A DNA stretch of 64,000 nucleotides, taken from the IMG/VR virus record IMGVR_UViG_3300022866_000322, positions 1-64,000 of that record; one strand, 5' to 3'. The position numbers and the translations under genes were made by a program. The notes under the pieces were generated by a model that saw only the letters and a program-made list of their open reading frames with translations, was not told the DNA's origin and made no database searches. Position 1 is the stretch's first letter. Each line of letters starts with the position of its first letter. Shown in pieces: positions 12,022 to 62,846 of the stretch.

Positions 12022-12270
12022 ATGGCAACCAACTTTGAAAAAAAACCAGGCAGACCTTTTGGCAATAAGGTAATAGTCCAGTACGACAATGTAGAAAAAG
12101 CTATGCGTAAACTAAAGAAAAAAGTTAGCGAAAGCGGAGTACTACAAACTTTACGCTCAAAAGAATCTTTTGAAAAACCCACTACAAGACGCAAGCGGAA
12201 ACATGCCGCCGCAGTTCGCAGATGGAAAAAGCAACTACTAGAAGAGCAGTTGCCTAAAAAGATGTACTAA
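12022..12270 (+). CDS. rpsU: Ribosomal protein bS21
   Basis: NVEKAMRKLKKKV...G.L..LR..E.FEKPT.RRKRK..AA.RR. Confidence 0.92.
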   Translation: MATNFEKKPGRPFGNKVIVQYDNVEKAMRKLKKKVSESGVLQTLRSKESFEKPTTRRKRKHAAAVRRWKKQLLEEQLPKKMY

Positions 12271-12513
12271 ATGCATATCCAGTGGGTCCTTCCACGTGCA
12301 AATGGAATACATGCAGTGGGATGGGCTCGCACTGAAATAGAATACGATGTTAGGACTTGGGCTGAAAAACACGATATAGATATCAAACACATTGGTATTA
12401 AGAACTGGTGTGTTCAATTGTGTTTGTCTACAGAACAAGACTATGTGGATTTTTTAGTATCATTTAATCCAGAACACTCCCGAAGTGAATCGTATGAACT
12501 AATAAGAGATTGA
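12271..12513 (+). CDS. Hypothetical protein
   Basis: Abuts rpsU stop. Confidence 0.5.
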   Translation: MHIQWVLPRANGIHAVGWARTEIEYDVRTWAEKHDIDIKHIGIKNWCVQLCLSTEQDYVDFLVSFNPEHSRSESYELIRD

Positions 12514-12543
12514 CATCTAGTCTTGTATCCTGTATAAATATAC

Positions 12544-12612
12544 TTGTAGTGCCGATTATCGGGCTACAACATCACAAGTCATAACTTGCTTAACATAAAG
12601 GAGAAAACTATG
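12544..12612 (+). promoter_or_regulatory. ROSE-like RNA thermometer leader of the sHSP gene
   Basis: 5' hairpin ttgtag..ccga-tta-tcgg.ctacaa; CTTGCTT (12585-12591) pairs with AAGGAG with bulged G. Confidence 0.55.
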
Positions 12613-13068
12613 ACATCATACAAACTTAGTACGACCAACCTTCCCGGATTTACTGCTTCACTTAATCGTCATGCCATCGGCTTTGACAACTTGTTTAATG
12701 AACTGACCCGAACACACTTGGGCAATTCAAAAGCAGATAATTATCCTCCATACAACATCATCAAAATTGACGAACACAACTGGGCGATCCAGGTTGCAGT
12801 TGCAGGGTTTGGTGAAGATGAGTTGAACATTGAATTCAAAAGCAATGTGTTGACTATCACCGGGGAGAAGCAGGAAGCAGAAGCAGAAGAACACGAATAC
12901 CTGCACAAAGGTATTAGTGCTCGCACATTCACTCGCACATTTACTCTCAACGAGAATGTTGAGATCAAAGGTGCAACAGTAGTAAATGGCATCCTGGCAG
13001 TCAGCTTAGAGCATGTTGTTCCGGACGAACAAAAGCCTAAAAAGATTGCAATTACCTTTACTAAGTAA
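12610..13068 (+). CDS. Small heat shock protein Hsp20/IbpA
   Basis: AIGFD, NYPPYNI, VAVAGF, YLHKGISARTF.RTF.L, NGILAVSL; start 12610 after AAGGAG. Confidence 0.95.
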   Translation: MTSYKLSTTNLPGFTASLNRHAIGFDNLFNELTRTHLGNSKADNYPPYNIIKIDEHNWAIQVAVAGFGEDELNIEFKSNVLTITGEKQEAEAEEHEYLHKGISARTFTRTFTLNENVEIKGATVVNGILAVSLEHVVPDEQKPKKIAITFTK

Positions 13069-13089
13069 TATAATATAGTTATAAACGCC

Positions 13090-13109
13090 GGGGGGAGGCA
13101 ACTCCCCCC
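13090..13109 (+). terminator. GC-rich hairpin
   Basis: ggggggag-gcaa-ctcccccc; weak U-tract. Confidence 0.5.
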
Positions 13110-13141
13110 ACTTACTAACTAGATGACCGAGAGTGTAAGCT

Positions 13142-13447
13142 ATGAGTGAAAAAACTGAAGTAAAACAATCTACAAAATCTAAAACAAGTATCAAACCACC
13201 TAATCTTTACAATGTAATCTACCTCAATGACAATAAGACCACAGTAGAGTTTGTTGTAGAGAGTCTGAAAGTAATTTTCCATCATAGTGAAGAAATAGCA
13301 AAAGAATTAACTGTTAAGATTCATAACGACGGTAGTAGCGTAGTAAAAACACTTACATATGAAGTTGCTGAGCAAAAAGGTGTAGAAGTAACAATGCTTG
13401 CTCGTAACAACGGATTCCCCCTCGAAGTTAAACTACAGCCAGCATAA
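13142..13447 (+). CDS. clpS: N-degron adaptor ClpS
   Basis: PNLYNVIYLNDNKTTVEFVVE.L...F, IH..G, E.AEQK, FPL. Confidence 0.93.
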   Translation: MSEKTEVKQSTKSKTSIKPPNLYNVIYLNDNKTTVEFVVESLKVIFHHSEEIAKELTVKIHNDGSSVVKTLTYEVAEQKGVEVTMLARNNGFPLEVKLQPA

Positions 13448-13455
13448 AAAATATT

Positions 13456-13989
13456 ATGGATATAATGTTAGATATTGAGACGTTAGGTACTCGTCCGCAG
13501 AGTGTCGTGTTGACTGTGGGTGCTGTTAAGTTTGACCCATACGCATCGGATGTGAATACAGACGACGGATTGTATGTTAGGATAGATGTAGACGAACAAA
13601 TAGCACTAGGCAGACATGTACACCAGGATGTAATTGATTGGTGGGGCAAGCAAGCAGAAGATGTTCGAGAAGAAGCCCTCGGTGATCACGAACGTGACAG
13701 TGTATCATCTTTTTTAGGAAAACTTAATAAGTTCCTAGTAGGGACTGATAACATATGGTGCCAAGGGCCTGCATTTGATGCAGTTATTCTTGAAGATTTG
13801 TATCGTGACATGGATACGCCCATGCCGTGGAACTTTTGGCAGATAAGAGATAGTCGTACATTGTTTAAAACTTTTGGAGATCCTAGAGATAAGGACGCTA
13901 AAGGTGCACACAATGCTTTAATAGATTGTTATTATCAAGCAACAGCAGTTCAACAAATTTATAAACAACAAGGATTGAAGAAACGATGA
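13456..13989 (+). CDS. DEDDh 3'-5' exonuclease (Rv2179c/DUF5051-like)
   Basis: MLDIETLG, FD.VILE, RDSRTL, HNAL.D. Confidence 0.88.
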   Translation: MDIMLDIETLGTRPQSVVLTVGAVKFDPYASDVNTDDGLYVRIDVDEQIALGRHVHQDVIDWWGKQAEDVREEALGDHERDSVSSFLGKLNKFLVGTDNIWCQGPAFDAVILEDLYRDMDTPMPWNFWQIRDSRTLFKTFGDPRDKDAKGAHNALIDCYYQATAVQQIYKQQGLKKR

Positions 13990-14318
13990 ATATTGTATGG
14001 GAACAACCCACAGACGAGATGTTTGAAAAGTATCTCATCTTAGAATTAGAGCCAAATGTGATTGATGGTAATCTATTAGACACATGGTGTGTAGTAGAAG
14101 CAACCAAGGTACCACTAGCAGAAGTTGTAATGTTGGATCATTGGAAGAAATTACATGGCGATTTCGTGCAAGCAAACAAAGACGGTGATGCTAAACTATG
14201 TAATGACCTAGCAGAACACTTGACTGGTAAGTTTGGTGGAGAGTTGGATACGTTCTATGAAGAAATTTGTAAACGTTACAATCAGTCCACTAAAATCGTA
14301 CTCCAAGACCAATCTTAA
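13986..14318 (+). CDS. Hypothetical protein
   Basis: ATGA overlap. Confidence 0.65.
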   Translation: MNIVWEQPTDEMFEKYLILELEPNVIDGNLLDTWCVVEATKVPLAEVVMLDHWKKLHGDFVQANKDGDAKLCNDLAEHLTGKFGGELDTFYEEICKRYNQSTKIVLQDQS

Positions 14319-14655
14319 CGTTATTAATAGAAGCCGCTCCATTAACTACTAGCCTAGTCATCAAGTACACAGGTCTGTGTTCCCCTTGAAAATAATCTGT
14401 CAGGTAGTAGTGTGTAACATAGTTTACTAGAAAAAACAAATCCACTGTATCCTTGTCTGGGTGCTCTCCCAGCACTGGATTGCGTTCCCGATATCCTTCA
14501 TCATATCTACTAGCCATATCTCTTGTGGTCAAGTGGTCAACTGCAATAGCTGTGGTTGACATCCAGAATAATTCTTTATCGTATTTGTCCCAGTCTGCGT
14601 ATTCTGCTTGTGCTATAAATGGCACTAACAGCAGTAATAGTAGTAGTTTTCTCAT
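14290..14655 (-). CDS. Exported/membrane hypothetical protein
   Basis: Start 14655 (TAAATA-N5-ATG); signal peptide MRKLLLLLLLVPFIAQA; D..TT...E.NP motif. Confidence 0.65.
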   Translation of the reverse strand: MRKLLLLLLLVPFIAQAEYADWDKYDKELFWMSTTAIAVDHLTTRDMASRYDEGYRERNPVLGEHPDKDTVDLFFLVNYVTHYYLTDYFQGEHRPVYLMTRLVVNGAASINNVKIGLGVRF

Positions 14656-14725
14656 GTAATTATTTATAGCCCATGAGTAAACTGTAAAAATTTGGGTAAA
14701 TACACTAAAGAAGGAGCTATTCAAA

Positions 14726-15007
14726 ATGACAGAAATACTTCAATTGATTGCCGAAGTTGGTTTTCCTATCGCCGCGGCACTGGCCGGCGGGTACTTTGTA
14801 TTCCTTACTATGCGCTTTATCCTTGACGGTGTAATGGGCAGTGTAAAAGGACTTACAGGAATAATTAACGCATTGGACAATCGTGTTAAGACCATGAACC
14901 ATGACGTGATTCGTATTGACACACTCATGAGCAATGCATTTGGGGTAACACCAGACTTGAACCGTATTGCTAGAGCAGACGGCAAGAACGATGCTCGTCG
15001 CGACTAG
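14726..15007 (+). CDS. Small single-TM protein with GFPI motif and coiled coil (YvrJ/holin-like)
   Basis: EVGFPIAAALAGGYFVF; paralogue of next gene. Confidence 0.7.
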   Translation: MTEILQLIAEVGFPIAAALAGGYFVFLTMRFILDGVMGSVKGLTGIINALDNRVKTMNHDVIRIDTLMSNAFGVTPDLNRIARADGKNDARRD

Positions 15008-15023
15008 AATGAGAGGCTACTAA

Positions 15024-15353
15024 ATGGACATTGATGTAGCCGGCGCAATAAACCAATATGGTTTTCCGATTATAGCCGCGTGTGGGTTAGGGTACTTTGT
15101 ATATTACATATGGACCTGGGCAACAAAAGAAATTGATCCTGTACTAAGCGAAGCACAAATGACGCTGATTGCGTTGATTGACAGAATTCGTATGCTTGAT
15201 AACGATTTAATTAGACTGAACCAAAAGTTAAACATGATTCTTGAACTAGATGCAAAAGCTAGAGCAAATTTACAAAAAGCACAAGAATTAGAACTAAAAC
15301 TAAAACAGGTCAAGGACCAAGGAGCTAAAACAAAAAATGAATCATCAAAGTAG
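15024..15353 (+). CDS. Small single-TM protein with GFPI motif and coiled coil
   Basis: QYGFPIIAACGLGYFVY; shared L.DR....D.D.IRL. Confidence 0.7.
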   Translation: MDIDVAGAINQYGFPIIAACGLGYFVYYIWTWATKEIDPVLSEAQMTLIALIDRIRMLDNDLIRLNQKLNMILELDAKARANLQKAQELELKLKQVKDQGAKTKNESSK

Positions 15354-15879
15354 TTATGAAAAGGCAGCCTGGCAGAAGTTTAAAAAGTCCAACCCAGTAA
15401 CCTATACTATATCAACAGTGTTGAGTTTTGGCTTTTGGAGTTTTATTATGGGATTCCTTGTGGGCATGTTTTTTATCAGTGCGGCAACAGCAGGCGACTT
15501 AACTTATAAGTTTAATAACCCTAGTTTTAACGGTATAGGCTACAGTAGTCATGTGTTGACCATTGAAAACCTAACACACACTAGAAGAGCAGAAATCAAA
15601 TCTAAGTTAGAGTCCGCGGCAAGAGAAATTGAGCGTGAAAAAGAAAACTCTAATGTTAATAAGTTCTTGGCTAATTTAGAAAGTAGAATCTATGCTGAAC
15701 TTAGTAAGCAAATTTCAGACAAACTGTTTGGGGAAAATCCACAAAGTAGTGGTACTATTGATCTACTAGGCAATACAGTGGCTTATGAAATGACCGACGA
15801 CCTAGTAACATTAAACGTAACGCAAACAGATGGATCAGTTACGAAGGTTGAAATTCCTGTTGCCAGTTTTGCCTTTTAA
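15337..15879 (+). CDS. csgF: Curli assembly protein CsgF-like
   Basis: LTYKFNNPSFNG N-terminal motif; F..NLESRIYA.LS; immediately before csgG. Confidence 0.8.
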   Translation: MNHQSSYEKAAWQKFKKSNPVTYTISTVLSFGFWSFIMGFLVGMFFISAATAGDLTYKFNNPSFNGIGYSSHVLTIENLTHTRRAEIKSKLESAAREIEREKENSNVNKFLANLESRIYAELSKQISDKLFGENPQSSGTIDLLGNTVAYEMTDDLVTLNVTQTDGSVTKVEIPVASFAF

Positions 15880-15888
15880 AGGAGATGC

Positions 15889-16707
15889 ATGCTAGGTAGA
15901 ATATGTGTGGCGTTATTGGTTTTTTTGTTAGTTGGTTGCGCCTCGACTAATCCAAAACTTGGCAGACCAGCTGAGCTTGCTGAAACCCCAGTCAAGAAAC
16001 ATTTAATTAATTTCCCTGCAATTAAAGGCGGACAGCCTGTGACAGTTGCAATATACAGTTTCCAAGATAAGACTGGACAACGTAAACCAGCAGATAACAT
16101 TGCCAACATCAGTACAGCAGTAACACAAGGTGCAGAAGTATACTTAATAGATGCACTAATGGCACTAGCAGATGGTGAGTTTTTTGATGTTGTAGAGCGC
16201 AATGGCCTGGACAACCTAATCAAAGAAAGACAGATTATACGTAATGCACGAAGTGAGTTTGATGAGAAACAGAAATTGGGTGCAATGAAGTTTGCTGGTA
16301 TTATAATCGAAGGCGGCATTATTGGTTATGATACAAACAAATTTACAGGTGGTATTGGCGCCAGGGTTATGGGCATTGGTGCACAACAAGAATGGCGTGT
16401 AGATGTAGTCACAATAGGGCTTAGAGCGGTAAGTGTACTGTCGGGAGAAGTATTGCTAAATGTGAGCACCGAAAAGACGATTTTAAGCACTAGTCTTGGC
16501 ATAAACGTGTTTAAATTCTACGATCAAGGCACACAAGTTCTAGAGGTAGAGTCAGGTACCAGTACCAATGAACCAGTTAATTATGCAGTAAAACAGGCAG
16601 TTGAACAAGCAGTAATTGAGTTAACCAAAGAAGGAAAACGTAAAAAACTATGGGATTACACTATGCTAGATGATAAATCAACAGGATGGAGTAATTACGT
16701 AGACTAG
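15889..16707 (+). CDS. csgG: Curli secretion channel CsgG/HfaB-family lipoprotein
   Basis: Lipobox LVGC; VAIYSFQDKTGQRKP, STAVTQGA, VVER.GL.NL.KERQIIR, EGGIIGYD. Confidence 0.93.
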   Translation: MLGRICVALLVFLLVGCASTNPKLGRPAELAETPVKKHLINFPAIKGGQPVTVAIYSFQDKTGQRKPADNIANISTAVTQGAEVYLIDALMALADGEFFDVVERNGLDNLIKERQIIRNARSEFDEKQKLGAMKFAGIIIEGGIIGYDTNKFTGGIGARVMGIGAQQEWRVDVVTIGLRAVSVLSGEVLLNVSTEKTILSTSLGINVFKFYDQGTQVLEVESGTSTNEPVNYAVKQAVEQAVIELTKEGKRKKLWDYTMLDDKSTGWSNYVD

Positions 16708-16816
16708 CGTATAACATACATATTTAATGATAGCAACTTATTATTTAAATACTAACGTGCGATAATACTAAGATATTGGCACGTATAATGGGGACCACCC
16801 AAAAGGAGCGACACAC

Positions 16817-17515
16817 ATGACAAGGATAGCATTAGCATTCATGTCTTTATTAATAAGCAGTCCGGCATGGGCTGACAACTTGATCTATATTGATCAGGTT
16901 GGATCATCAGCCACAATCACTATAGATCAAGACGGTTCTGGAAACAGCGTTGGCGCAAGCGGTGACGACAGCAAGAGCGATGGCGCCAGCACCATATTAG
17001 ACATTGACCAAGTTGGATCAAGCAATGCATTAGATTACGATGTTTACGGCGACAACGCCAGTGTAACAGCAACCACTAATGGCAATAGTTCAGACATTGA
17101 CATACAGGTAGGTACTACAGGAGGCACCAACGGTGGCAGTGATGATGTTACAATCAGCATCACCAATCCAGGCAACACAAACACTGTTGGTGTAAACGTT
17201 GGCGCTACACAAAGTCTTGTTGACGATGTTAACGTAGACATTGACCTAACCAGCGGCAGTGGCAGTAATACTATAACAGTAACTGAGGATTCCACAGCAA
17301 CTAGTATCCTAGACAAAACCACAGACATTGACATTGACGGCAGTACCAACACCGTTACAGTTACCCACAGTGGTGCTTCACAACACGACACTCTGCTTAA
17401 TCATACCGGCAGCAGTTCAACTCTAAGTATTACTCAATCAGGTGCAGAGGCGAGTACAGTAGATGTTAACACAAATGGTTCAACTTCTAGCGTTACTATT
17501 AACGTTTCAGATTAG
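16817..17515 (+). CDS. Secreted curlin-repeat-like beta-solenoid protein
   Basis: Signal peptide; repeated IDQxGxxN / xxGxxN units rich in S, T, G, N, D. Confidence 0.75.
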   Translation: MTRIALAFMSLLISSPAWADNLIYIDQVGSSATITIDQDGSGNSVGASGDDSKSDGASTILDIDQVGSSNALDYDVYGDNASVTATTNGNSSDIDIQVGTTGGTNGGSDDVTISITNPGNTNTVGVNVGATQSLVDDVNVDIDLTSGSGSNTITVTEDSTATSILDKTTDIDIDGSTNTVTVTHSGASQHDTLLNHTGSSSTLSITQSGAEASTVDVNTNGSTSSVTINVSD

Positions 17516-18530
17516 TACGTGTTATGCAGGGATCGGTACAGTTGAAAAACAAACCGGCCCTGCACAACTTACACGCGATAATGACAAAATCACAGTAGAA
17601 AAAGATCTGGGTGTAGAGATGCTGGACACAATAAGCACCGCCGACGGTATTATTGGTATTGGCTTCAATGATGATACCAAAATACAAATTGAAAAACACA
17701 GCAAATTAATCATTGATGATTTCATATATGATGCCGCTGACCCTACAAAAAGTAAGCTCAAGATGAAAGTGGGCTTGGGCACAGTTAAGTATGCATCAGG
17801 TAAGATTGCTAAAAACAACAGACAAAGCGTAGACATACAAACACCAACAGCACGTATTGGTGTGCGTGGTACTGCATTCAGCATGACCGTAGACGAAATA
17901 GGCAGGAGTCTTGTTATACTGTTGCCCAACGCAGATGGCACTGTGGGAGAGATATCTGTTGAAAGCGATATAGGGCAGGTAATACTTAACCAGGCATATC
18001 AAGCAACAATGGTCAACACACGAGAAAATGTACCAACACCACCTGTCCTATTGGACCTAGATGTAAATCAAATTAACAACCTGTTAATTGTACAAAAGCC
18101 AAAAGAAAAAGAGGACGAGACTCAGGCTGAACGTGAACAGTCCATATTAGATTTTAATGAACTTGACGTTAATCTTCTTGACAACAATGAATTAGATGAA
18201 GACGAGTTAGTGTTCACAAGACTAGACTTTAACCTACTTGATGTTGATATGTTGGGTAATATTTTAGATTTAATGAATGCAAAACTGCTTAAAGAGGTAG
18301 ACTCGTTCTCAACTAATCCTATTAGGCCAGGAGCATATGAACAAGGTAACACACAGATTGTGCTGGATGGTGAGTGGCTTATATATAGAAACGTTGACGG
18401 TAGGATTTTTAGCATTACACTTGACCAAAACAGCAGTACACAAATGAACTTGAATCAAGCAGGTAGCCCAATAACATTACACACAACGGAGAACGCAAGT
18501 GACACGGTTATTACTATTAATCAAAATTAG
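17463..18530 (+). CDS. FecR-domain periplasmic protein
   Basis: D.I.T.DG...I.F.D.T, L.IDDF.YD, TPTA.IGVRGTAF. Confidence 0.85.
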   Translation: MLTQMVQLLALLLTFQISTCYAGIGTVEKQTGPAQLTRDNDKITVEKDLGVEMLDTISTADGIIGIGFNDDTKIQIEKHSKLIIDDFIYDAADPTKSKLKMKVGLGTVKYASGKIAKNNRQSVDIQTPTARIGVRGTAFSMTVDEIGRSLVILLPNADGTVGEISVESDIGQVILNQAYQATMVNTRENVPTPPVLLDLDVNQINNLLIVQKPKEKEDETQAEREQSILDFNELDVNLLDNNELDEDELVFTRLDFNLLDVDMLGNILDLMNAKLLKEVDSFSTNPIRPGAYEQGNTQIVLDGEWLIYRNVDGRIFSITLDQNSSTQMNLNQAGSPITLHTTENASDTVITINQN

Positions 18531-18837
18531 TTTAGTTTTACTATTAGGTGCATGTGTACCGCATCATGTTTATGATCAACCACACTCATACTATGATGGT
18601 ACCATGAAAATTGTAATCATGGATCCAGAAACCATACAAACCACATGGGAACAGTATACTGGAAAAACCACAAAGGTTAAAGGATGGGCTCGCTGGAGTG
18701 TAACAGAAGAAGGCAAGAAATGGTGTGAGGTATTTGTACCTTATGTGCAGCCAGATCTTGACATGCGTGTGTGGTTGCACGAAATGCGTCACTGCACAGA
18801 AGGACACTTCCACAAAGGGCCAGCAGAGTATGAATAA
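18499..18837 (+). CDS. Small lipoprotein with HExxH motif
   Basis: Lipobox LGAC; WLHEMRHC. Confidence 0.6.
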   Translation: MTRLLLLIKISLVLLLGACVPHHVYDQPHSYYDGTMKIVIMDPETIQTTWEQYTGKTTKVKGWARWSVTEEGKKWCEVFVPYVQPDLDMRVWLHEMRHCTEGHFHKGPAEYE

Positions 18838-19603
18838 ACTGCTACTATTACTATCGTTAATTATTAGCACAGCAAGTGCTGATAACTTAATATCTATTGA
18901 CCAAGTAACCAGCGGAAACTCTAATAGCATAACGGTCACTGTGGATGGTAGTGATAACGAAATTGATTACAGTTTTGGTGGTGCCAGTAATACTGTGGCT
19001 ATAGATCAGAAGGGCGATGATGCTTATGTTGGGTATACAGCTACATGGGGCAGTGGTGCTGGATGGGGAGGCGACCTAGACGGTGACTCCAACGATATGG
19101 ACATTAAACAGTTATGCAACCAATTAGCATGCGAAGGCGACAGGTTTGAATTCCATGTTGCTGGTAACAACAACAGTATTAAAATAGGGCAGGGATATCA
19201 TGTGCAGGCCGACGGTACTTTTCAATCACCTGACAGTGTAGAATACGGTGGCCACAATATAAGATTGGATGTACACGGATCAAACAACAGTTTCATAGGA
19301 AGTCAACGAGCAGGCGGCGACAACCATAGTAATATTACTAACATTTATGGTAGCTATAATGACGTTTACGCAAGACAAGAATACAACTTTGACAAATCTA
19401 TAGACCTAACAATATCAAACAGCAACAATGATGTAGATATCATACAAGGTGGAAGTGCTAGTCATTCAGCAACAATTTCCCTGTCAGGCACATACGGAAC
19501 AGATTTAGATTTGACACAATACAGTAGCACAGCACAAACATATAGCCTATCGCAATCATGTGCGACAGTAGGCGGATGTTCTGTGTCAGTTACCCAAAAC
19601 TAA
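18830..19603 (+). CDS. Second secreted curlin-repeat-like protein
   Basis: Start 18830 gives signal peptide MNKLLLLLSLIISTASA; IDQ, GxxN repeats. Confidence 0.72.
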   Translation: MNKLLLLLSLIISTASADNLISIDQVTSGNSNSITVTVDGSDNEIDYSFGGASNTVAIDQKGDDAYVGYTATWGSGAGWGGDLDGDSNDMDIKQLCNQLACEGDRFEFHVAGNNNSIKIGQGYHVQADGTFQSPDSVEYGGHNIRLDVHGSNNSFIGSQRAGGDNHSNITNIYGSYNDVYARQEYNFDKSIDLTISNSNNDVDIIQGGSASHSATISLSGTYGTDLDLTQYSSTAQTYSLSQSCATVGGCSVSVTQN

Positions 19604-19624
19604 ATACCTAGTCAAGGAAAAAAC

Positions 19625-21715
19625 ATGAAAAAATGGTTAGTGGCGTTGATCGCCCTGGGTGCGGTATTGAGTATTAGGTGGACGGATCCGTGGATAGTAG
19701 AAGTTATCCGCCTCAAAGCACTGGACACACATCAACGTAGTGTCCCACAAGAAACAATTCAGTTAGACAGCGACATTCCTATTGCTGTGGTTAGAATAGA
19801 CAACGATGATATTGACCGCAACGGACAGTGGCCTTGGCCTCGTGACATACTAGCCAATGAAATTATACGACTATACGAGAATGGTGCGGGGCTTGTGGTA
19901 CTGCCCATGCTGTTTGCTGAGGAAGATCGCTTTGGTGGCGACCCTGCATTTATAGATTTGTTACAGAATGCACCTGTTATTGTTGGGCAAGTTCCTGCGC
20001 TGAGAGGCAAGGGTGTACCAGTACCACGTGGCATTGCTATTAAGGACAACAGCACAACAGGCAAAGCATGGGAAGATTGGCTATTCCGTTATGGACAAGC
20101 AATAGGTCCAACAAAAGAAATTGGTGAGAGTGCTTGGGGCGTTGGTATGATGTTGAGCAGTACAGAAGCTGATGGAGTTGTACGTAAACTTCCGCTTGTT
20201 GTTCGCATACCCAGCAAAGAGCCTACAGACAGCGCACAGATATTTCCCAGCATACCCACAGAGATTGTGCGTGTACTGGCAGGTGACATCAGTTACCAAA
20301 TGAAGCTGGGTGACGCAGGTGTGGAAGCAGTGCGTATCCCACAGTTTAGCACAATTAAGACAGACGCAAACGGTAGCATCTACGTAGACTACAAATACAA
20401 AGTACAGGAGTTTGCATTTGACAATTTGCCCAACTTCAATGGCGGTATTGTTATACTAAGTTTAACAGCGTCGGGGTTGGACAACACCATTGCAACTCCA
20501 GTTGGCAGAAGTTATGATCATGATTTAATTGCCGCAAGTGTTTACACAATAGTTAATGGTATCAACATAAGTCGCCCATGGTGGTCAGACCTTGGTGAAC
20601 TGGCAACAGCACTGGCAATAAGTTTGGTAGTAATGATACTGGTACTTAAACTAAACTGGTACTTTGGTGTTGGTGGCATTGTGGTATCATTAGGTGGCAT
20701 ATTCTACGGTAGTAGGACAGCATACTTGAACGATGGCTATTTGCTGGATTGGAGTTTCCCAATATTTGCAGTGTTCCTCACATGGAGTATAGCGGCATTC
20801 CTGCGCTTCATGGATGAGTTTAGACAAAAGCAAGAAATCAAAAAACAGTTTGCAGGCTATGCAAGTCCTACAGTGGTACGTATGCTTCAAGAGAATCCAG
20901 GTCTAATCAAGGATGGCATGAAGCGTGAAATCAGTATTTGTTTTAGTGACCTACGTGGCTTTACTCCACTAGGTGAAAGTTTTGGCGATGATGTAAAAGG
21001 ACTTACCAACTTGATGAACGGCTACATGGATGCTATTACGCAACCAGTACTGGATCGTGACGGAATGATCATAAAGTACATTGGTGATGCGTCAATGCAT
21101 GTACACAATGCACCCAACGATGATCCACGCCACCATCACTCAGCAGTTAAAACAGGATTGGACATGCTTACAGCAGTGGAAAAGTTCAATGATAAAATTG
21201 TAGCAGAAGGAAGACCACCGATTGGCATGGGTGCTGGCATTAATAGCGGACTAGGTTACTTGGGTGAAATGGGTAGTACGTCAAGACACAGTTATGATGT
21301 GTTAGGCGATGCTGTTAGTACTGCGGCACGTATTGAGAGCAAGTGTAAAGAATATGGATGTTTGTTACTTGTAGGCGAAACCACATACGATGCAACCAAG
21401 AATGATTTCTTTTACTTAAAGGTAGACGAACTTGCAGTAAAAGGTAAAACTGTGGGCATACGCATCTACACTGTACTAGGTGAAAAAGAACAAACAACTG
21501 CATGGCAAGCAAGCAAACAGTTACACATCGAAATGCATCAATATTATAGAGAGCAGAGTTTTAACAAAGCAATCACTTTATGCAACAAACTAAAAGGCTC
21601 ATTTGATGGACAAATAGATGGGTATTATGATATGTGGATTGAACGCTGTGAATATATGCTAACACAAGATCTACCTGCTGCCTGGGACGGAATATTTGTG
21701 GCTACAACCAAGTAG
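19625..21715 (+). CDS. CHASE2-domain class III adenylate/guanylate cyclase
   Basis: GQWPWPR and DGVVRK (CHASE2), TM bundle, FSDLRGFT, KYIGDA, GDAVSTAARIES, VKGK. Confidence 0.95.
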   Translation: MKKWLVALIALGAVLSIRWTDPWIVEVIRLKALDTHQRSVPQETIQLDSDIPIAVVRIDNDDIDRNGQWPWPRDILANEIIRLYENGAGLVVLPMLFAEEDRFGGDPAFIDLLQNAPVIVGQVPALRGKGVPVPRGIAIKDNSTTGKAWEDWLFRYGQAIGPTKEIGESAWGVGMMLSSTEADGVVRKLPLVVRIPSKEPTDSAQIFPSIPTEIVRVLAGDISYQMKLGDAGVEAVRIPQFSTIKTDANGSIYVDYKYKVQEFAFDNLPNFNGGIVILSLTASGLDNTIATPVGRSYDHDLIAASVYTIVNGINISRPWWSDLGELATALAISLVVMILVLKLNWYFGVGGIVVSLGGIFYGSRTAYLNDGYLLDWSFPIFAVFLTWSIAAFLRFMDEFRQKQEIKKQFAGYASPTVVRMLQENPGLIKDGMKREISICFSDLRGFTPLGESFGDDVKGLTNLMNGYMDAITQPVLDRDGMIIKYIGDASMHVHNAPNDDPRHHHSAVKTGLDMLTAVEKFNDKIVAEGRPPIGMGAGINSGLGYLGEMGSTSRHSYDVLGDAVSTAARIESKCKEYGCLLLVGETTYDATKNDFFYLKVDELAVKGKTVGIRIYTVLGEKEQTTAWQASKQLHIEMHQYYREQSFNKAITLCNKLKGSFDGQIDGYYDMWIERCEYMLTQDLPAAWDGIFVATTK

Positions 21716-21716
21716 A

Positions 21717-22943
21717 CTAACTGAGCATTAAGTTTCGTACTTGCTCATAGTTAATTACGTCACTTGGTAAGCGATGTCGTTCTATGCGATCATGGTTATA
21801 CCAATTGACCTGTTTCTTGAAGTTACCTAACAGTTCATCTACGATTATTTCTTTGAACTTTCCGTAAAAGTGTTGATGATTATATTCCAACACTTCTTGC
21901 ATTTGTTCCTGCTGTTGTGCAATGTCTTTGTTTTTAAGTTTAGACAATTGCTCTACAATCATGTTGATACGCAATGTTGGATCTTGTTCTTGGTCGTAAC
22001 TTTCATCTATCCATTGATCGAATGTACGAAAGCCATAACGTTTCAAGTATGCCAAGTTACCAGGTGCGCCCACAAGTATGAAAGGACGCTTGCTTACAAT
22101 TGGTTTGAATATTTTTTCAGTAAGGTGTAAACTATCACCATAGTATACAGTTTCTGTTACCACGTGCCACAGTGCATCATATCCGTAAGATGTTAAATCA
22201 GCACTAGCATTGTTGTAGTCAACAGTATCAAGCACACTAGGAGTTGCTTGTTTAGCCAGGTGTTTAAATATGTGCTTCTTGGCGTCAACTGGTAATCTAC
22301 TGTTGGTGTTGAACAGTTCATTCTTAACTAAATCACTTGTTAACAGAGGGGCTGAAATGTGTCCAAGATCTGTTAAGCCTCTTTGACTTATCTGCGAAAG
22401 CAAGTATAATCTGTAGTTACGATTATTAGTCAACAAGTGATTTAAACAAATAAATAGTTTTGTAGGTTTTACGTATGAATAGTCAAGATACTTATAGTTC
22501 CTAAACCAATCAAGAGCCGCAAATCCATGAAAAAAGAAATACCAATCTGCTACACCCCATTCCCTAAGGTACTTTCGTTTTTGTTGACTGACTTCAGAGT
22601 TAGCTAATACATGAAAGTTAACATCAGATATCATCATATTAACTGAAGGGTGTGACGGACTTGACGGCCATATATAGTTTTCAGTTGGGTGACCGGGATC
22701 AATGGTATGCGTATGGTACGCATCAAAGTAACGAACTTGATCTAAGTCATTGTAACTTAGTGGTTCTTCATGCCACCAAATACAACGTCCAACAGTTGAA
22801 CCGTAAAAGTCTTCGCAATGCTGGGAGTACATAAAATGTTCGATGTTAGTACTGAAACTTGGAAAGAACCCAGCGTCGTACAACGACAGTGGTTTTAATA
22901 ACTGTTCATATAAAAATAAACTAAACTTATCAACGGAGATCAT
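21717..22943 (-). CDS. Glycosyltransferase-like protein, paralogue of 35966..37066
   Basis: VVTET...LTEKIFKPI..KRPF...G..G.L..L..YGF.TF...IDESYD. Confidence 0.65.
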   Translation of the reverse strand: MISVDKFSLFLYEQLLKPLSLYDAGFFPSFSTNIEHFMYSQHCEDFYGSTVGRCIWWHEEPLSYNDLDQVRYFDAYHTHTIDPGHPTENYIWPSSPSHPSVNMMISDVNFHVLANSEVSQQKRKYLREWGVADWYFFFHGFAALDWFRNYKYLDYSYVKPTKLFICLNHLLTNNRNYRLYLLSQISQRGLTDLGHISAPLLTSDLVKNELFNTNSRLPVDAKKHIFKHLAKQATPSVLDTVDYNNASADLTSYGYDALWHVVTETVYYGDSLHLTEKIFKPIVSKRPFILVGAPGNLAYLKRYGFRTFDQWIDESYDQEQDPTLRINMIVEQLSKLKNKDIAQQQEQMQEVLEYNHQHFYGKFKEIIVDELLGNFKKQVNWYNHDRIERHRLPSDVINYEQVRNLMLS

Positions 22944-22945
22944 TA

Positions 22946-24181
22946 ATGCAAATAGGTTTTATAGGGTTAGGTAAATTAGGGCTTCCATGTGCTGAAGCAA
23001 TGGCCACACAGTATTCTGTGACTGGCTACGATATTTACAACAAAACAAGTGACACCATAAAAATATCACCCTCACTGGAAGGTGCAGTTAAAGGCAAAGA
23101 CATTGTATTCGTAGCAGTGCAAACTCCACACGATCCTGTGTACGACGGAAGTCGACCTATTACACATTTAGCAAACAAAGACTTTGACTATACTATAGTT
23201 AAACAAGTTTTAACAGACATAAACCAACATGTTGGACAGGAAACACTAGTAGTGCTAATCAGCACAGTATTACCCGGCACTACAAGGACACAGTTGCGTG
23301 ATTGTGTGTCAGAAGCACGTTTTGTTTACAACCCCTACCTTATTGCTATGGGTAGCGTTGCATGGGATATGGTTAATCCTGAAATGGTTATTATTGGTAC
23401 AGAAGATGGATCAGAAACAGGTGACGCAAAAGAACTTATTAACTTTTATAAGCCGTTAATGGAAAATGATCCCAAGTATAATGTTGGCACATGGGATGAA
23501 GCAGAAAGCATAAAGATATTTTACAACACATTCATCAGCACAAAAATTGGCCTGGTAAACATGATACAGGATGTTGCAGTGAAGAACGGTAACATTGATG
23601 TTGATGTGGTTACAGAAGCATTAGCAGGTAGCACACTGCGTATTGTAAGTCCCAAGTACATGAAAGCAGGCATGGGAGATGCAGGACCTTGCCACCCAAG
23701 AGACAACATTGCACTGCGTTGGTTAGCAGAAAGATTAGATCTCGGATACGATATATTTGACACTGTGATGCATGCTAGGGAAAAACAAGCAGAAAATGTT
23801 GCCAGTTACCTAACAGCACTGCAAAAGAAAAACAACATGCCGGTACGCATCATGGGCAAAGCATACAAGCCCGACGTTGATATACTGGATGGCAGTTATA
23901 GTTTGTTGATTGGGTATTACCTGGAAAAACAAGGTACAGACTTTGCTTATGTTGATCCGCTTACTAACGATATAGCAACCGATACCGACCAACCTGTTAT
24001 AGCATTCCTGGCGCACAACAGACAAGTCACATATGGATATACTGGAAATAAAAAGCGACAAGAATTCTATTGTGATGTTGCTACAGGAAGCATCATAGTT
24101 GATCCATGGAGAACATATCCGAAAATAGACAACAACTATAAAGTAATACATTATGGAAACACTAGATTTAAAACAGTTTAA
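22946..24181 (+). CDS. UDP-glucose/GDP-mannose dehydrogenase family
   Basis: GFIGLGKLG, AVQTP, STVLPGT, AESIKIFYN, GPCHPRD, AYKP. Confidence 0.92.
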   Translation: MQIGFIGLGKLGLPCAEAMATQYSVTGYDIYNKTSDTIKISPSLEGAVKGKDIVFVAVQTPHDPVYDGSRPITHLANKDFDYTIVKQVLTDINQHVGQETLVVLISTVLPGTTRTQLRDCVSEARFVYNPYLIAMGSVAWDMVNPEMVIIGTEDGSETGDAKELINFYKPLMENDPKYNVGTWDEAESIKIFYNTFISTKIGLVNMIQDVAVKNGNIDVDVVTEALAGSTLRIVSPKYMKAGMGDAGPCHPRDNIALRWLAERLDLGYDIFDTVMHAREKQAENVASYLTALQKKNNMPVRIMGKAYKPDVDILDGSYSLLIGYYLEKQGTDFAYVDPLTNDIATDTDQPVIAFLAHNRQVTYGYTGNKKRQEFYCDVATGSIIVDPWRTYPKIDNNYKVIHYGNTRFKTV

Positions 24182-24677
24182 TATTGATAGCAATATCATT
24201 GATGATGAGTACAAAAACTTAGATTACGTCATTGAAAAGTTCAATGATAGTGCAACACTAGAACATTGGCGCAATATGGGGTACAATGGGACTATCGGTG
24301 GGCAATTATGTGATATGCGTTCCCCACAACCAACCTGGAACAACCAAATAGTTAACACATTTGAGAAACTGTTTAACTGGAAAGATGTTTGTACCAGTTA
24401 CTATAAAATGTGGCCAGGCTCAAGTTTGCCTAAGCACCAAGACACGTACAAAAAGTATATAGAAATCTTTAATCTAAAAGGACAAGAGCAGTCAATTTGG
24501 AGATCCATAGTGTTTTTGGAAGACTGGCAAAGTGGACATTATCTTGAAATAGATAACGTCCCGCACACAGGCTGGAGTAAAGGATCTGTGATAACTTGGC
24601 AGTACAACACACCACATATTGCGGCTAACTTGGGCATGACGCCGCGTTATACACTACAGGTAACAGGACATACATGA
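24153..24677 (+). CDS. Cupin/2OG-Fe(II) oxygenase-like protein
   Basis: PG..LPKHQD, PH.AAN.G..PRYTLQVT. Confidence 0.7.
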   Translation: METLDLKQFNIDSNIIDDEYKNLDYVIEKFNDSATLEHWRNMGYNGTIGGQLCDMRSPQPTWNNQIVNTFEKLFNWKDVCTSYYKMWPGSSLPKHQDTYKKYIEIFNLKGQEQSIWRSIVFLEDWQSGHYLEIDNVPHTGWSKGSVITWQYNTPHIAANLGMTPRYTLQVTGHT

Positions 24678-25600
24678 TACACACCTATAACGAATGGGAC
24701 AAACTACAGGAAATAGTAGTTGGTCGTGCAGATTGTGCTAACTGGCCCACAGATGATCCTGTGTTTGCTAAAGAAAGCGAAAAGACACTGTGGAAAGAAA
24801 CCCCAGTGCCCACAGGCCCAGTACCACAGTGGGTTATTGATGAGGCCAATGCGGATCTGGATAACCTCGCTGGATTTCTAACACAGTGGGGAGTTACTGT
24901 ACATAGACCCACTGACATGAACTTCCAAAAACTTGGTGGTATGTACAACTACTGTCCCAGGGACAGACTGTTGGTGTACGGTGATAAGATTATTGATTGT
25001 GCTATGATGTATCCCTGTAGGGATATGGAAATAGAAGCACTGGGCATGGTCACTGAAGGACACGAAGTTATTCGCATGCCACGCGATCAAGGCATGGTAC
25101 TTGACGCTGCCAATGTTTGTCGCCTTGGTGATACACTGTTGGTGTTGGAAAGTGAAAGCGGAAATAAAAGAGCAATTTCCTGGTTGGCAAAACAGTTGCC
25201 TGATGCTATTATACAAACATGCAATTTTTACAGCGGAGTGCATATAGACAGCACCATTACCCCACTGCAAGAAGGCATAGTCATAGTCAACGGCAACAGA
25301 GTTAACAAGGATAACCTACCAAGTGTATTTAAAGACTGGGAAGTTATCTTTGTTAACGAAGTTGTTCCTCAAAGTTTTTATCAATACCCATACGCAAGTA
25401 AATGGATCGCAATGAACATGTTAGTAGTACAACCTGGTACGGTCATTGTGGATCGGGCGCAAACTGAACTAATAGAGTTACTTGAAAACAAATATAAAAT
25501 GATTGTAATTCCCATGCAGTTGAGACATTCAAGAACGCTAGGGGGCGGATTCCACTGTGTTACACTGGATATAAATCGCACATTGCTAATAAATAGTTAA
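24674..25600 (+). CDS. Amidinotransferase (glycine / inosamine-phosphate amidinotransferase family)
   Basis: NEWD.L.EI.VG, CPRD, DAAN, HIDST, GGGFHC.TLD catalytic Cys. Confidence 0.92.
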   Translation: MIHTYNEWDKLQEIVVGRADCANWPTDDPVFAKESEKTLWKETPVPTGPVPQWVIDEANADLDNLAGFLTQWGVTVHRPTDMNFQKLGGMYNYCPRDRLLVYGDKIIDCAMMYPCRDMEIEALGMVTEGHEVIRMPRDQGMVLDAANVCRLGDTLLVLESESGNKRAISWLAKQLPDAIIQTCNFYSGVHIDSTITPLQEGIVIVNGNRVNKDNLPSVFKDWEVIFVNEVVPQSFYQYPYASKWIAMNMLVVQPGTVIVDRAQTELIELLENKYKMIVIPMQLRHSRTLGGGFHCVTLDINRTLLINS

Positions 25601-42687: not shown

Positions 42688-42709
42688 AAAAGGGCCTCTG
42701 GGCCCTTTT
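42688..42709 (+). terminator. Intrinsic terminator
   Basis: aaaagggcc-tctg-ggccctttt. Confidence 0.75.
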
Positions 42710-42725
42710 CTAGTAAATACAAGTT

Positions 42726-42990
<265 letters not shown>

Positions 42991-43015
42991 GCAGGGCTTT
43001 CGGGCCCTGCTTTTT
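42991..43015 (+). terminator. Intrinsic terminator of tmRNA
   Basis: gcagggc-tttcgg-gccctgc-ttttt. Confidence 0.85.
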
Positions 43016-43035
43016 CTTTAGTTCTAGGATTTAAA

Positions 43036-43512
43036 ATGGCTATAGCGATGCAATCATTACCATATGTTTATAAACTACCCGATGGTACATATATTCACGT
43101 TACTATGCGACAGTATGGCGGTATTGCGTTAAGTGGAGAAGCACTTGAGGACTTTAACAGTGACATGGCTAGATTAAACGTAGTAGAAAAGGCCCATTTA
43201 GGCAAATACCAAGTACAAAGAGAAACAATAGAAGGAACCGTTAACATAAACGGACAGTCTTACCCTAAAGTACCACTATTAAAATCTACGTATCCTAATG
43301 AATCAGAGTTGCCAGACTTCAGTGATGATTACTTTAGTATTATGTGGAAATGGGGTACTATAATGACACAAGACCCCAATATTAGGTACCATGCTCCAGG
43401 AGCATCAGGTAATAGTTACGTCAATGAAAAAGATCCCTGCATCAAAGAAGTTGGCACATATGGCGACAAGCATAAAATGTGTACATGGTCAACTATTACT
43501 AATGTACAGTAA
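43036..43512 (+). CDS. Hypothetical protein
   Basis: ORF. Confidence 0.55.
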   Translation: MAIAMQSLPYVYKLPDGTYIHVTMRQYGGIALSGEALEDFNSDMARLNVVEKAHLGKYQVQRETIEGTVNINGQSYPKVPLLKSTYPNESELPDFSDDYFSIMWKWGTIMTQDPNIRYHAPGASGNSYVNEKDPCIKEVGTYGDKHKMCTWSTITNVQ

Positions 43513-62482: not shown

Positions 62483-62572
62483 GGAAGTGTGGCCGAGTGG
62501 CTTAAGGCGGGAGATTACTAATCTCTTGTACGTGCAAACGTACCGTGGGTTCGAATCCTACCACTTCCGCCA
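62483..62572 (+). tRNA. tRNA-Ser (anticodon ACT)
   Basis: GGAAGTG/CACTTCC acceptor, G73, CCA, long variable arm, loop TT-ACT-AA. Confidence 0.9.
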
Positions 62573-62602
62573 AATGTTTTAACAAGATACAATGGAGATA
62601 GT

Positions 62603-62758: not shown

Positions 62759-62764
62759 ACGCAT

Positions 62765-62841: not shown

Positions 62842-62846
62842 ACCTT

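What the first reader, a model, noticed from the sequence alone, without database searches (positions are those of the whole stretch)
14726..21715. Contiguous curli-type secretion plus transmembrane signalling module: CsgF, CsgG, two curlin-like proteins, FecR, CHASE2 cyclase
Seen: nine co-oriented, often overlapping genes encoding an outer-membrane pore pair, two signal-peptide proteins with QxGxxN-type repeats, a periplasmic FecR domain and an inner-membrane CHASE2 class III cyclase, behind TAAATA motifs. Known: CsgG/F export amyloid curlins. I recall csgF/csgG being reported in marine myophages such as OM43 phage Melnitz, with a suggested lysis role. Inference: having candidate substrates and a cyclase argues instead for a surface fibre or sensor wired to cNMP output, for example superinfection sensing, lysis timing or aggregation of infected cells.
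Basis: partly seen in the sequence, partly recalled or inferred. Interest (0 to 1): 0.85.

Follow-up and report, generated by a model that had tools for sequence, protein, structure and literature searches.

The report
Phage curli secretion module with cyclase
A large uncultivated T4-like phage carries a complete curli-type fibre-secretion gene set joined to a membrane sensor that probably makes cAMP; this kind of module was already described in marine phages in 2022, so this is a new, somewhat divergent member whose function is still untested.

Summary
Window 14726-21715 holds nine co-oriented, mostly overlapping genes:
- two small single-pass membrane proteins
- CsgF
- CsgG
- a curlin-like beta-solenoid protein
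- a secreted FecR-domain protein
- a small HExxH lipoprotein
- a second curlin-like protein
- a CHASE2 class III cyclase

The phage's most enriched upstream hexamer, TAAATA, precedes three of these genes.

The kind is not new. Melnitz and HTVC008M have the same gene order. Wittmers et al. 2022 (PMC9599517) described the viral T8SS with FecR and adenylate cyclase. At least 550 IMG/VR stretches encode the cyclase.

New here:
- Chromosomal operons in Henriciella and Caulobacteraceae MAGs have the same CsgF-CsgG-curlin-FecR-CHASE2 cyclase order. Their cyclases are sister to the viral clade. The paper said FecR and the cyclase lie outside bacterial T8SS operons.
- The two small membrane proteins are phage-only, always linked to the module, and show no kinase domain.
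- Window-type cyclases carry a conserved paired active-site change, Asp558 plus Ser565.
- The HExxH lipoprotein was found only in near-identical copies of this module.

Best reading: a late-expressed fibre-secretion cassette with its own periplasm-to-cAMP signalling arm, taken whole from an alphaproteobacterium. Its role in infection is unknown.

The parts
14697..14702 (+). TAAATA late-promoter-like motif, 24 nt before the start of gene 1
   Evidence: It is the most enriched upstream hexamer of the genome. It is conserved upstream of TM1 in 28 of 33 viral relatives.
14726..15007 (+). TM1: a 93 aa single-pass membrane protein with an N-terminal helix and a C-terminal coiled segment
   Evidence: Hits phrog_18771 at 1e-30 and gives a weak holin PHROG hit at 1e-4. 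There is a weak YvrJ lead and no kinase domain. It is conserved in Melnitz and HTVC008M. Its nearest Atlas clusters are all viral. It was not found in the four bacterial genomes that hold the operon.
15024..15353 (+). TM2: a 109 aa paralogue of TM1
   Evidence: Hits phrog_18771 at 3e-30. It always travels with TM1 next to the module, upstream or convergent downstream.
15337..15879 (+). CsgF homologue with a signal peptide. The mature N-terminus is GDLTYKFNNPSFNG.
   Evidence: PF10614 at 2e-18, covering profile positions 6-132 of 132. Hits phrog_35372. The N-terminal motif is shared with Melnitz and HTVC008M.
15889..16707 (+). CsgG outer-membrane lipoprotein pore (lipobox LVGC)
   Evidence: PF03783 at 7e-51. 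Matches E. coli CsgG chains at 1.9e-47 over residues 4-258. NCBIfam CsgG at 6.6e-51.
16746..16751 (+). TAAATA motif in the 109 nt gap before curlin A. A TATAAT lies further downstream.
   Evidence: Few relatives have TAAATA before curlin A (3 of 42).
16817..17515 (+). CurA: a secreted curlin-like beta-solenoid subunit, 232 aa
   Evidence: QxGxxN motifs are invariant across 42 homologues. The AlphaFold model has pLDDT 86.8 and is all-beta. The top hit of an unbiased PDB search is Pontibacter CsgA 8c50, Z 19.6, 20% identity. NCBIfam CsgA at 1.2e-6.
17463..18530 (+). Secreted FecR-domain protein: signal peptide, beta-sandwich domain (25-195), acidic disordered linker, and a small C-terminal beta domain (297-354)
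   Evidence: PF04773 at 1.5e-8. AlphaFold model. Z 15.2 to the PupR periplasmic signalling domain 6ovk. There is no transmembrane or anti-sigma part.
18499..18837 (+). Lipo7: a 112 aa lipoprotein (lipobox LGAC) with HEMRHCTEGH, possibly a minimal zincin
   Evidence: Among the 80 viral loci it occurs only in the three that are 100% identical to the window. Only three homologue clusters were found. Atlas neighbours are viral and have zincin-like folds, which is a lead only. It is not homologous to the curlins.
18830..19603 (+). CurB: a second curlin-like secreted protein, 257 aa, with a conserved C-terminal Cys pair
   Evidence: Curlin_rpt at 22.2 bits. It aligns with Melnitz gp103 and the HTVC008M homologue. 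NCBIfam CsgB at 1.5e-3.
19601..19606 (+). TAAATA motif overlapping the CurB stop codon, 24 nt before the cyclase start
   Evidence: TAAATA lies upstream of the cyclase in 29 of 41 viral relatives.
19625..21715 (+). Inner-membrane CHASE2 sensor fused to a class III cyclase, 696 aa
   Evidence: PF05226 at 9e-32 and PF00211 at 9e-18. The best solved relative is the P. aeruginosa CyaB catalytic domain. Metal-binding Asp442 and Asp488, Lys484, Asp558 and Arg569 are present, but the transition-state Asn is Ser565.

Best explanation
This is a self-contained curli-type (type VIII) fibre-secretion cassette with its own periplasm-to-cytoplasm signalling arm. A T4-like phage lineage inherited it as one block from an alphaproteobacterial operon and expresses it late in infection.

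Proposed working:
- Transcription starts at TAAATA late-type promoters before TM1, CurA and the cyclase.
- Sec exports CsgF, CsgG, CurA, CurB, the FecR-domain protein and the small lipoprotein.
- CsgG is lipidated and forms the outer-membrane pore.
- The conserved N-terminal peptide of CsgF sits in the pore.
- CurA and CurB pass through unfolded and fold outside into beta-solenoid fibres on the infected cell.
- The soluble FecR-domain protein has the fold that, in PupR/FecR, links an outer-membrane protein to an inner-membrane signaller. It binds the periplasmic CHASE2 domain and sets the activity of the cytoplasmic cyclase.
- The cyclase's substrate-specifying residues (Lys/Asp) predict cAMP. 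The cAMP would have to act on host receptors.

What is shown: gene identities, export signals, folds, conserved order, bacterial ancestry, the promoter motif, and presence in RNA libraries.

What is inferred: fibre formation, FecR-CHASE2 contact, cAMP output, and the benefit to the phage (aggregation, surface masking or timing).
For: Family and fold assignments.

Conserved order in phages:
- The same order is annotated in Melnitz and HTVC008M.
- It appears in most of 80 IMG/VR loci and in 212-333 kb phage contigs.
- At least 550 IMG/VR stretches encode the cyclase.

Bacterial counterparts:
- Chromosomal loci L005/L006 (Caulobacteraceae MAGs) and L009/L010 (Henriciella MAGs) have CsgF-CsgG-curlin-FecR-CHASE2 cyclase in the same order.
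- Their flanks are housekeeping genes.
- Their GC is host-like.
- In L005 a CpdA/SpdA-like phosphodiesterase gene lies just upstream.

Cyclase tree: the viral clade (support 99) is sister to these bacterial cyclases (99). Together (100) they stand apart from other CHASE2 cyclases.

FecR-CHASE2 adjacency: seen in 32 of 76 FecR-selected bacterial loci and reported in PMC9239204, PMC5192318 and PMC5498481.

Promoter motif: TAAATA is enriched genome-wide and conserved before TM1, CsgF and the cyclase.

RNA libraries: near-identical contigs in marine metatranscriptome runs cover pieces of every gene except CsgF, where only about 93%-identical contigs (probably a relative) align. Expression was also reported in PMC9599517.
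Against: - No experiment shows fibres.
- The Melnitz authors saw no clumping of infected cultures (PMC9004378).
- No CsgE-like adaptor was found.
- CurA scores below the Curlin_rpt cut-off, and beta-solenoids in general match its model at Z 10-17.
- The cyclase has Ser where the transition-state Asn should be, so its activity is unproven.
- No cNMP-binding protein is encoded in the 221 kb held.
- RNA-library contigs can derive from contaminating DNA.
- In the tree the bacterial clade is sister to, not around, the viral clade, so the direction of transfer rests on context, not on topology.
Confidence: 0.55

Rival explanations
1. Pore-only lysis device, as proposed by Buchholz et al. 2022 for Melnitz. 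CsgG, with or without CsgF, acts as a gated outer-membrane channel or pinholin-like trigger that times lysis. The repeat proteins are not substrates.
For: - The module sits behind late-type promoter motifs.
- TM1 gives a weak hit to a PHROG annotated as holin, at 1e-4.
- TM1/TM2 are phage-specific add-ons.
- No clumping was reported for Melnitz.
Against: - CurA travels with CsgG/CsgF in all phage and bacterial versions. It has curlin motifs and a CsgA-like solenoid model.
- CsgF is a full-length Pfam CsgF with the conserved N-terminal peptide.
- The same six-gene operon sits in bacterial chromosomes, where lysis timing makes no sense.
- A CsgG pore lies in the outer membrane, not the energised inner membrane.
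Confidence: 0.12
2. Signalling comes first. The FecR-domain protein and the CHASE2 cyclase sense an envelope or external cue and reset host physiology through cAMP. The fibres are secondary or serve only as the sensed ligand.
For: - FecR-CHASE2 pairs exist widely without any CsgG (PMC9239204, PMC5192318).
- The cyclase has its own conserved TAAATA motif.
- The catalytic core is otherwise intact and the paired D558/S565 change is conserved in 83 of 84 viral sequences.
- A phosphodiesterase gene lies next to the bacterial operon.
Against: - According to PMC9599517, FecR stays with the viral T8SS even where the cyclase is absent. That ties FecR to secretion at least as much as to the cyclase.
- No phage-encoded cAMP receptor was found.
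- The Asn-to-Ser change may lower activity.
Confidence: 0.18
3. Import channel. The ungated CsgG pore lets cofactors or iron compounds in, with FecR acting as an iron-related regulator. This is an alternative raised by Wittmers et al. and Zaragoza-Solas et al.
For: - No CsgE gate was found.
- The FecR domain family is best known from ferric-citrate signalling (PMC9599517).
Against: - The protein lacks the anti-sigma and transmembrane parts of FecR.
- No TonB-dependent transducer above cut-off and no ECF sigma factor are present in the 221 kb held.
- This reading does not explain two conserved curlin-like secreted proteins or CsgF.
Confidence: 0.07

Closest known systems
Viral T8SS (curli) module of pelagiphages and methylophage Melnitz (HTVC008M; Zaragoza-Solas 2020 PMC7029224; Buchholz 2022 PMC9004378; Wittmers 2022 PMC9599517)
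   Same: The gene order is the same: two small membrane proteins, CsgF, CsgG, curlin-like, FecR, curlin-like, CHASE2 cyclase. It also lies in the same variable region next to auxiliary genes.
   Different: - It is divergent: the cyclase is 53% identical to Melnitz, 35% to HTVC008M and 62% to the nearest IMG/VR relative.
- The genome is at least 221 kb and is held in full by salt-lake metagenome runs.
- It has an extra HExxH lipoprotein gene between FecR and the second curlin.
- The published 'histidine kinase' label for the small proteins is not supported here.
Chromosomal CsgF-CsgG-curlin-FecR-CHASE2 cyclase operons in Henriciella/Hyphomonas-like and Caulobacteraceae MAGs (found here: L005, L006, L009, L010)
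   Same: The six core genes are in the same order. The cyclases are sister to the viral clade.
   Different: - There is no TM1/TM2 pair.
- The cyclases keep the ancestral Ser/Thr558 plus Asn565.
- GC is 50-53% with housekeeping flanks.
- One locus has a neighbouring phosphodiesterase gene.
- The operon is rare: only 1 of 301 sampled genomes of the order has a close FecR.
Enterobacterial curli system csgBAC-csgDEFG
   Same: It shares the CsgG lipoprotein pore, CsgF, and secreted subunits with QxGxxN repeats predicted to form a beta-solenoid.
   Different: - No CsgE was found. No Pfam, PHROG or NCBIfam hit to CsgC or CsgD appeared among the nine module proteins; the rest of the genome was not searched for them.
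- The subunits are longer and only weakly similar.
- It has added FecR and CHASE2-cyclase genes.
FecR-domain protein plus CHASE2 signalling pairs in bacteria (Campylobacterota cAMP cluster PMC9239204; Burkholderia LysM-FecR + CHASE2 kinase PMC5192318; S. meliloti CyaD1/Clr/smc02177 PMC5498481)
   Same: A periplasmic FecR-domain protein is encoded next to a CHASE2 membrane sensor. This was seen in 32 of 76 loci here.
   Different: Those pairs are not joined to a secretion pore and fibre subunits. Their ligands and mechanism are also unknown.
FecR/PupR anti-sigma regulators of cell-surface signalling
   Same: The periplasmic domain has the same fold (Z 15.2 to 6ovk).
   Different: There is no cytoplasmic anti-sigma domain and no membrane anchor. 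No FecI-type sigma factor or TonB-dependent transducer partner was found.

Membership tests
Type VIII (curli) secretion system | CsgG outer-membrane lipoprotein pore | tested here: met
   PF03783 at 173 bits. Full-length match to E. coli CsgG at 1.9e-47, with an LVGC lipobox.
Type VIII (curli) secretion system | CsgF with an N-terminal peptide that inserts in the CsgG barrel | tested here: met
   PF10614 at 67 bits over the whole profile. The mature N-terminus YKFNNPSFNG is conserved in Melnitz and HTVC008M. Complex formation was not tested.
Type VIII (curli) secretion system | Secreted subunits made of curlin repeats (QxGxxN) that form a beta-solenoid | tested here: inconclusive
   - CurB is over the Curlin_rpt cut-off (22.2 bits) and CurA is under it (16.3 bits).
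- NCBIfam CsgA at 1.2e-6 is far below its cut-off.
- QxGxxN columns are invariant.
- The model's top structural hit is CsgA, Z 19.6, but with rmsd 8.6, and other solenoids score Z 16-17.
Type VIII (curli) secretion system | CsgE periplasmic adaptor/gate | tested here: not met
   No PF10627 match in the 221 kb held. CsgE is also reported absent from alphaproteobacterial systems (PMC9599517).
Type VIII (curli) secretion system | Extracellular amyloid fibres | not testable with these tools
   This needs expression with Congo red/ThT and EM.
FecR/PupR-type anti-sigma regulator | Periplasmic FecR domain | tested here: met
   PF04773 at 35.4 bits. Z 15.2 to the PupR C-terminal signalling domain.
FecR/PupR-type anti-sigma regulator | N-terminal cytoplasmic anti-sigma domain and a transmembrane helix | tested here: not met
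   The FecR domain follows a cleavable signal peptide directly.
FecR/PupR-type anti-sigma regulator | Partner ECF sigma factor and TonB-dependent transducer | tested here: not met
   No Sigma70_r2 match. The only TonB-receptor match is sub-threshold at 12.8 bits.
CHASE2-linked class III adenylate cyclase | Periplasmic CHASE2 domain between transmembrane helices | tested here: met
   PF05226 at 111 bits over residues 11-337.
CHASE2-linked class III adenylate cyclase | Catalytic residues: two metal-binding Asp, purine-specifying Lys and Asp/Thr, transition-state Asn and Arg | tested here: inconclusive
   Asp442, Asp488, Lys484, Asp558 and Arg569 are present. The Asn position is Ser565 in 83 of 84 viral sequences, whereas all 28 bacterial homologues and HTVC008M have Asn.
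Viral T8SS module of Wittmers et al. 2022 | Order: small 'HK' genes, CsgF, CsgG, CsgA/B-like, FecR, CsgA/B-like, cyclase | tested here: met
   The small proteins show no kinase domain in Pfam, NCBIfam or PHROGs.

The most novel reading that the evidence does not exclude
The secreted FecR-domain protein is the missing periplasmic adaptor of this CsgE-less secretion system and, at the same time, the ligand of the CHASE2 domain. The state of the pore or of the fibres at the cell surface would then be reported to the cytoplasm as cAMP.

In phages this outside-in signal, together with the phage-only TM1/TM2 pair, would let an infected cell adjust late events, such as lysis timing, to what happens at its surface.

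The rare bacterial operons would be the ancestral form of such a secretion-coupled second-messenger circuit.
Probability: 0.15. Interest if true: 0.8.

Novelty: new member of a known kind. Interest (0 to 1): 0.4.

Why it matters
Curli-type modules are among the most widespread auxiliary gene sets of marine phages. Their hosts are reported to lack curli genes, and no function has been shown for the modules.

This window adds a divergent member from a much larger phage genome. The comparison it prompted gives three practical leads:
- The bacterial chromosomal operon with the same six genes offers a cellular context in which to study the system, if a cultivable carrier can be found.
- The FecR-CHASE2 pair is a widespread signalling pair with no known ligand. 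Here it has an obvious candidate input, the secretion system.
- The conserved Asp558/Ser565 change marks a testable shift in the cyclase.

If fibres are made, phage infection would alter cell surfaces and aggregation of abundant plankton.

Tried and rejected
- Megablast of the region against GenBank phages found nothing. Protein-level search was needed.
- I considered that the 112 aa ORF was a split-off N-terminus of the second curlin gene. The alignment shows no homology, and Melnitz and HTVC008M lack it.
- The 'histidine kinase' identity of the two small proteins was rejected. No HisKA or HATPase hit appears at any threshold, only a weak YvrJ and a weak holin lead.
- Foldseek against PDB and Swiss-Prot models gave no significant match for CurA. 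Only the Foldseek-independent search put CsgA first.
- phmmer of CsgF against PDB chains missed E. coli CsgF. The Pfam profile finds it.
- I guessed that the 5ix9 'cell surface anchoring domain' matched the C-terminal domain of the FecR protein. It maps to residues 21-116, so the guess is dropped.
- No Rfam family occurs in 14000-22500. The CsgG-CurA spacer shows no significant RNA structure.
- The canonical TATAAATA is not enriched: 4 matches against 5.7 expected. The shorter TAAATA is enriched.
- No cNMP-binding, CsgE, ECF sigma or TonB-receptor gene was found in the 221 kb.
They were re-sent without those rows.

Full report
**What is there**

Window 14726-21715 contains nine + strand ORFs with short gaps or overlaps. 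Profile searches assign most of them:
- CsgF: PF10614, 2e-18, whole profile.
- CsgG: PF03783, 7e-51.
- FecR: PF04773, 1.5e-8.
- CHASE2 plus a class III cyclase domain: 9e-32 and 9e-18.
- Two signal-peptide proteins with weak Curlin_rpt matches.

PHROGs holds viral families for seven of the nine proteins; the two curlin-like proteins have none at this threshold.

Further detail on individual genes:
- CsgG aligns over its full length with E. coli CsgG (1.9e-47) and has a lipobox.
- The two leading genes are 93 and 109 aa paralogues, each with one N-terminal membrane helix (phrog_18771).
- The seventh gene is a 112 aa lipoprotein with an HExxH motif. It is unrelated to the curlin-like genes.
- The second curlin-like gene most likely starts at 18830.

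**The curlin-like proteins**

Across 42 homologues of CurA, the QxG and QxGxxN positions are invariant.
- An AlphaFold model built on that alignment is confident (pLDDT 86.8, pTM 0.82) and consists of about 19 strands.
- Foldseek found nothing significant.
- A search of 48,161 PDB representatives that does not rely on Foldseek put the curli subunit CsgA of Pontibacter korlensis first: Z 19.6, 194 residues aligned, 20% identity. The rmsd is high (8.6), and generic beta-helices follow at Z 16-17.
- The NCBIfam CsgA and CsgB models also match below their cut-offs (1.2e-6, 6.9e-5).

I take these proteins as curlin-like solenoid subunits. Amyloid behaviour is untested.

**The FecR protein and the cyclase**

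The FecR protein has four parts:
- a signal peptide
- a confident beta domain (25-195)
- an acidic disordered linker
- a small C-terminal beta domain

The first domain matches the periplasmic signalling domain of the anti-sigma regulator PupR at Z 15.2. There is no anti-sigma domain and no membrane anchor. The 221 kb genome shows no ECF sigma factor and no TonB-dependent receptor above cut-off.

The cyclase is closest to the catalytic domain of P. aeruginosa CyaB.
- It keeps both metal-binding aspartates, the Lys/Asp pair that specifies adenine, and the arginine.
- The transition-state asparagine is Ser565.
- This is not decay of one copy. 83 of 84 viral sequences have Asp558 with Ser565. HTVC008M and all 28 bacterial homologues have Ser/Thr558 with Asn565.

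**Promoters and expression**

TAAATA is the most frequent hexamer in the 65 nt upstream windows of 238 crude gene calls. It occurs before 52 genes on the sense strand against 10 antisense, and in 1.9% of random windows, with a median position of -27.
- Between 14000 and 22000 it occurs on the + strand only before TM1, CurA and the cyclase.
- In viral relatives it is conserved before TM1 (28 of 33), before CsgF where that gene leads (25 of 39), and before the cyclase (29 of 41). It is almost never found before CsgG, FecR or TM2.
- From established knowledge of T4-type late promoters (core TATAAATA), I infer late transcription. The full octamer itself is not enriched.

The region is held at 100% of sampled words by fourteen salt-lake metagenome runs, some of which may be the source sample. 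Short, near-identical contigs from marine metatranscriptome runs cover pieces of every gene of the module except CsgF. On CsgF only contigs about 93% identical, probably from a relative, align. This shows presence in RNA libraries, not proof of transcription. It agrees with the expression reported in PMC9599517.

**What is already known**

The same eight genes, in the same order, are annotated in methylophage Melnitz and pelagiphage HTVC008M.
- Zaragoza-Solas et al. 2020 reported the CsgF/CsgG cluster and the 'sibling capture' idea.
- Buchholz et al. 2022 proposed a lysis-timing pore and stated that fibre genes are missing.
- Wittmers et al. 2022 identified the CsgA/B-like genes, FecR, a 'histidine kinase' and the adenylate cyclase as parts of a viral T8SS shared by podo- and myophages. 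They also proposed an alphaproteobacterial origin and reported expression in metatranscriptomes.

The window's copy is a divergent member:
- Its cyclase is 53% identical to Melnitz, 35% to HTVC008M and 62% to the nearest IMG/VR relative.
- Three IMG/VR contigs carry identical copies.

**What the comparison added**

1. *A bacterial counterpart.* A scan of 185,579 species genomes with the FecR alignment, followed by my own HMM scan of the flanks, found the order CsgF-CsgG-curlin(1-2)-FecR-CHASE2 cyclase in four MAGs: two Caulobacteraceae and two Henriciella.
   - The flanks are housekeeping genes on contigs up to 396 kb.
   - GC is host-like.
   - In one lineage a CpdA/SpdA-like cyclic-nucleotide phosphodiesterase gene lies just upstream.
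   - In the cyclase tree these bacterial proteins form the sister clade of all viral ones. Together they are separated from other CHASE2 cyclases with full support.
   - This contradicts the statement that FecR and the cyclase are not within bacterial T8SS operons. It fits capture of the whole block, although the topology alone does not fix the direction.
   - The operon is rare: 1 of 301 sampled genomes of that order has a close FecR.
2. *A widespread FecR-CHASE2 pair.* FecR-CHASE2 adjacency is common in bacteria without CsgG (32 of 76 loci). This matches scattered reports.
3. *Phage-only small membrane proteins.* The TM1/TM2 pair is absent from the bacterial versions.
   - In GenBank phages it is found only in those with the module.
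   - It keeps company with the module even when moved to the other end on the opposite strand.
   - No kinase domain is detectable.
4. *A lineage-specific lipoprotein.* Among the 80 viral loci the HExxH lipoprotein was found only in the three identical to the window, and only near-identical homologues turned up. Its zincin-like nature is a lead only.
5. *Very large phage genomes.* Related modules without the second curlin sit on 212-333 kb phage contigs. The window's own record is 221 kb at an estimated 63% completeness.

**Mechanism and verdict**

The best-supported reading is a complete fibre-secretion cassette coupled to a FecR/CHASE2/cAMP arm, taken whole from an alphaproteobacterium and expressed late.
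- Secretion of fibres, FecR-CHASE2 contact and cAMP output are inferences.
- No cNMP-binding protein is encoded in the held genome, so any output must act on the host.
- The pore-only lysis idea, an import channel, and a signalling-first reading remain possible but fit the conserved gene set less well.
- The kind is known, so this is a new member, with modest added insight and an open function.

Noticed in passing
window 42697-43042 (+): A permuted (two-piece) tmRNA gene with tag peptide ANENSYFEEFALAA. It recalls the two-piece ssrA described in Melnitz.
   Followed up: no
window 62483-62921 (+): A cluster of three tRNA genes: Ser-ACT, Thr-TGT and Glu-TTC.
   Followed up: no
window 12022-13989 (+): Directly upstream of the module lie genes for ribosomal protein S21, an Hsp20 small heat-shock protein, the ClpS adaptor and an Rv2179c-like 3'-5' exoribonuclease. 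Together they form a run of host-like auxiliary genes.
   Followed up: partly
window 14290-14655 (-): A divergent minus-strand ORF whose likely start gives a 121 aa signal-peptide protein with no family hit. An exact TATAAATA sits on its strand at 14661-14668, only a few bases before that start.
   Followed up: partly
window 20885-21715 (cyclase residues 558 and 565): A paired active-site change, Asp558 plus Ser565, is fixed in 83 of 84 viral cyclases. HTVC008M and all 28 bacterial homologues have Ser/Thr plus Asn. Its effect on activity or nucleotide choice is unknown.
   Followed up: partly
window 18499-18837 (+): A small lipoprotein with HEMRHCTEGH is inserted in the module. Among the 80 viral loci scanned it occurs only in the three identical to the window. 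Atlas neighbours are viral clusters whose models resemble minimal zinc metalloproteases.
   Followed up: partly
G000 (whole record, 221,342 bases): CheckV rates the record 63% complete, which implies a genome well above 300 kb. The region is held in full by salt-lake metagenome runs, and near-identical pieces occur in marine metatranscriptome runs.
   Followed up: partly
L005 5797-6657 (+): In the Caulobacteraceae MAG, a metallophosphoesterase gene lies just upstream of CsgF. It matches the SpdA and CpdA cyclic-nucleotide phosphodiesterase models (2e-33, 4e-24, below cut-offs).
   Followed up: partly
L185-L188: Phage contigs of 212-333 kb carry TM1-TM2-CsgF-CsgG-CurA-FecR-cyclase without a second curlin gene. 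Their neighbours include a small OMP beta-barrel gene, a NUDIX gene and a Bax1-I gene.
   Followed up: no
window 21717-25600: Downstream of the module lie a 408 aa minus-strand ORF without any family hit, a UDP-glucose/GDP-mannose dehydrogenase-like gene and two further unassigned ORFs. These may be surface-sugar genes.
   Followed up: no
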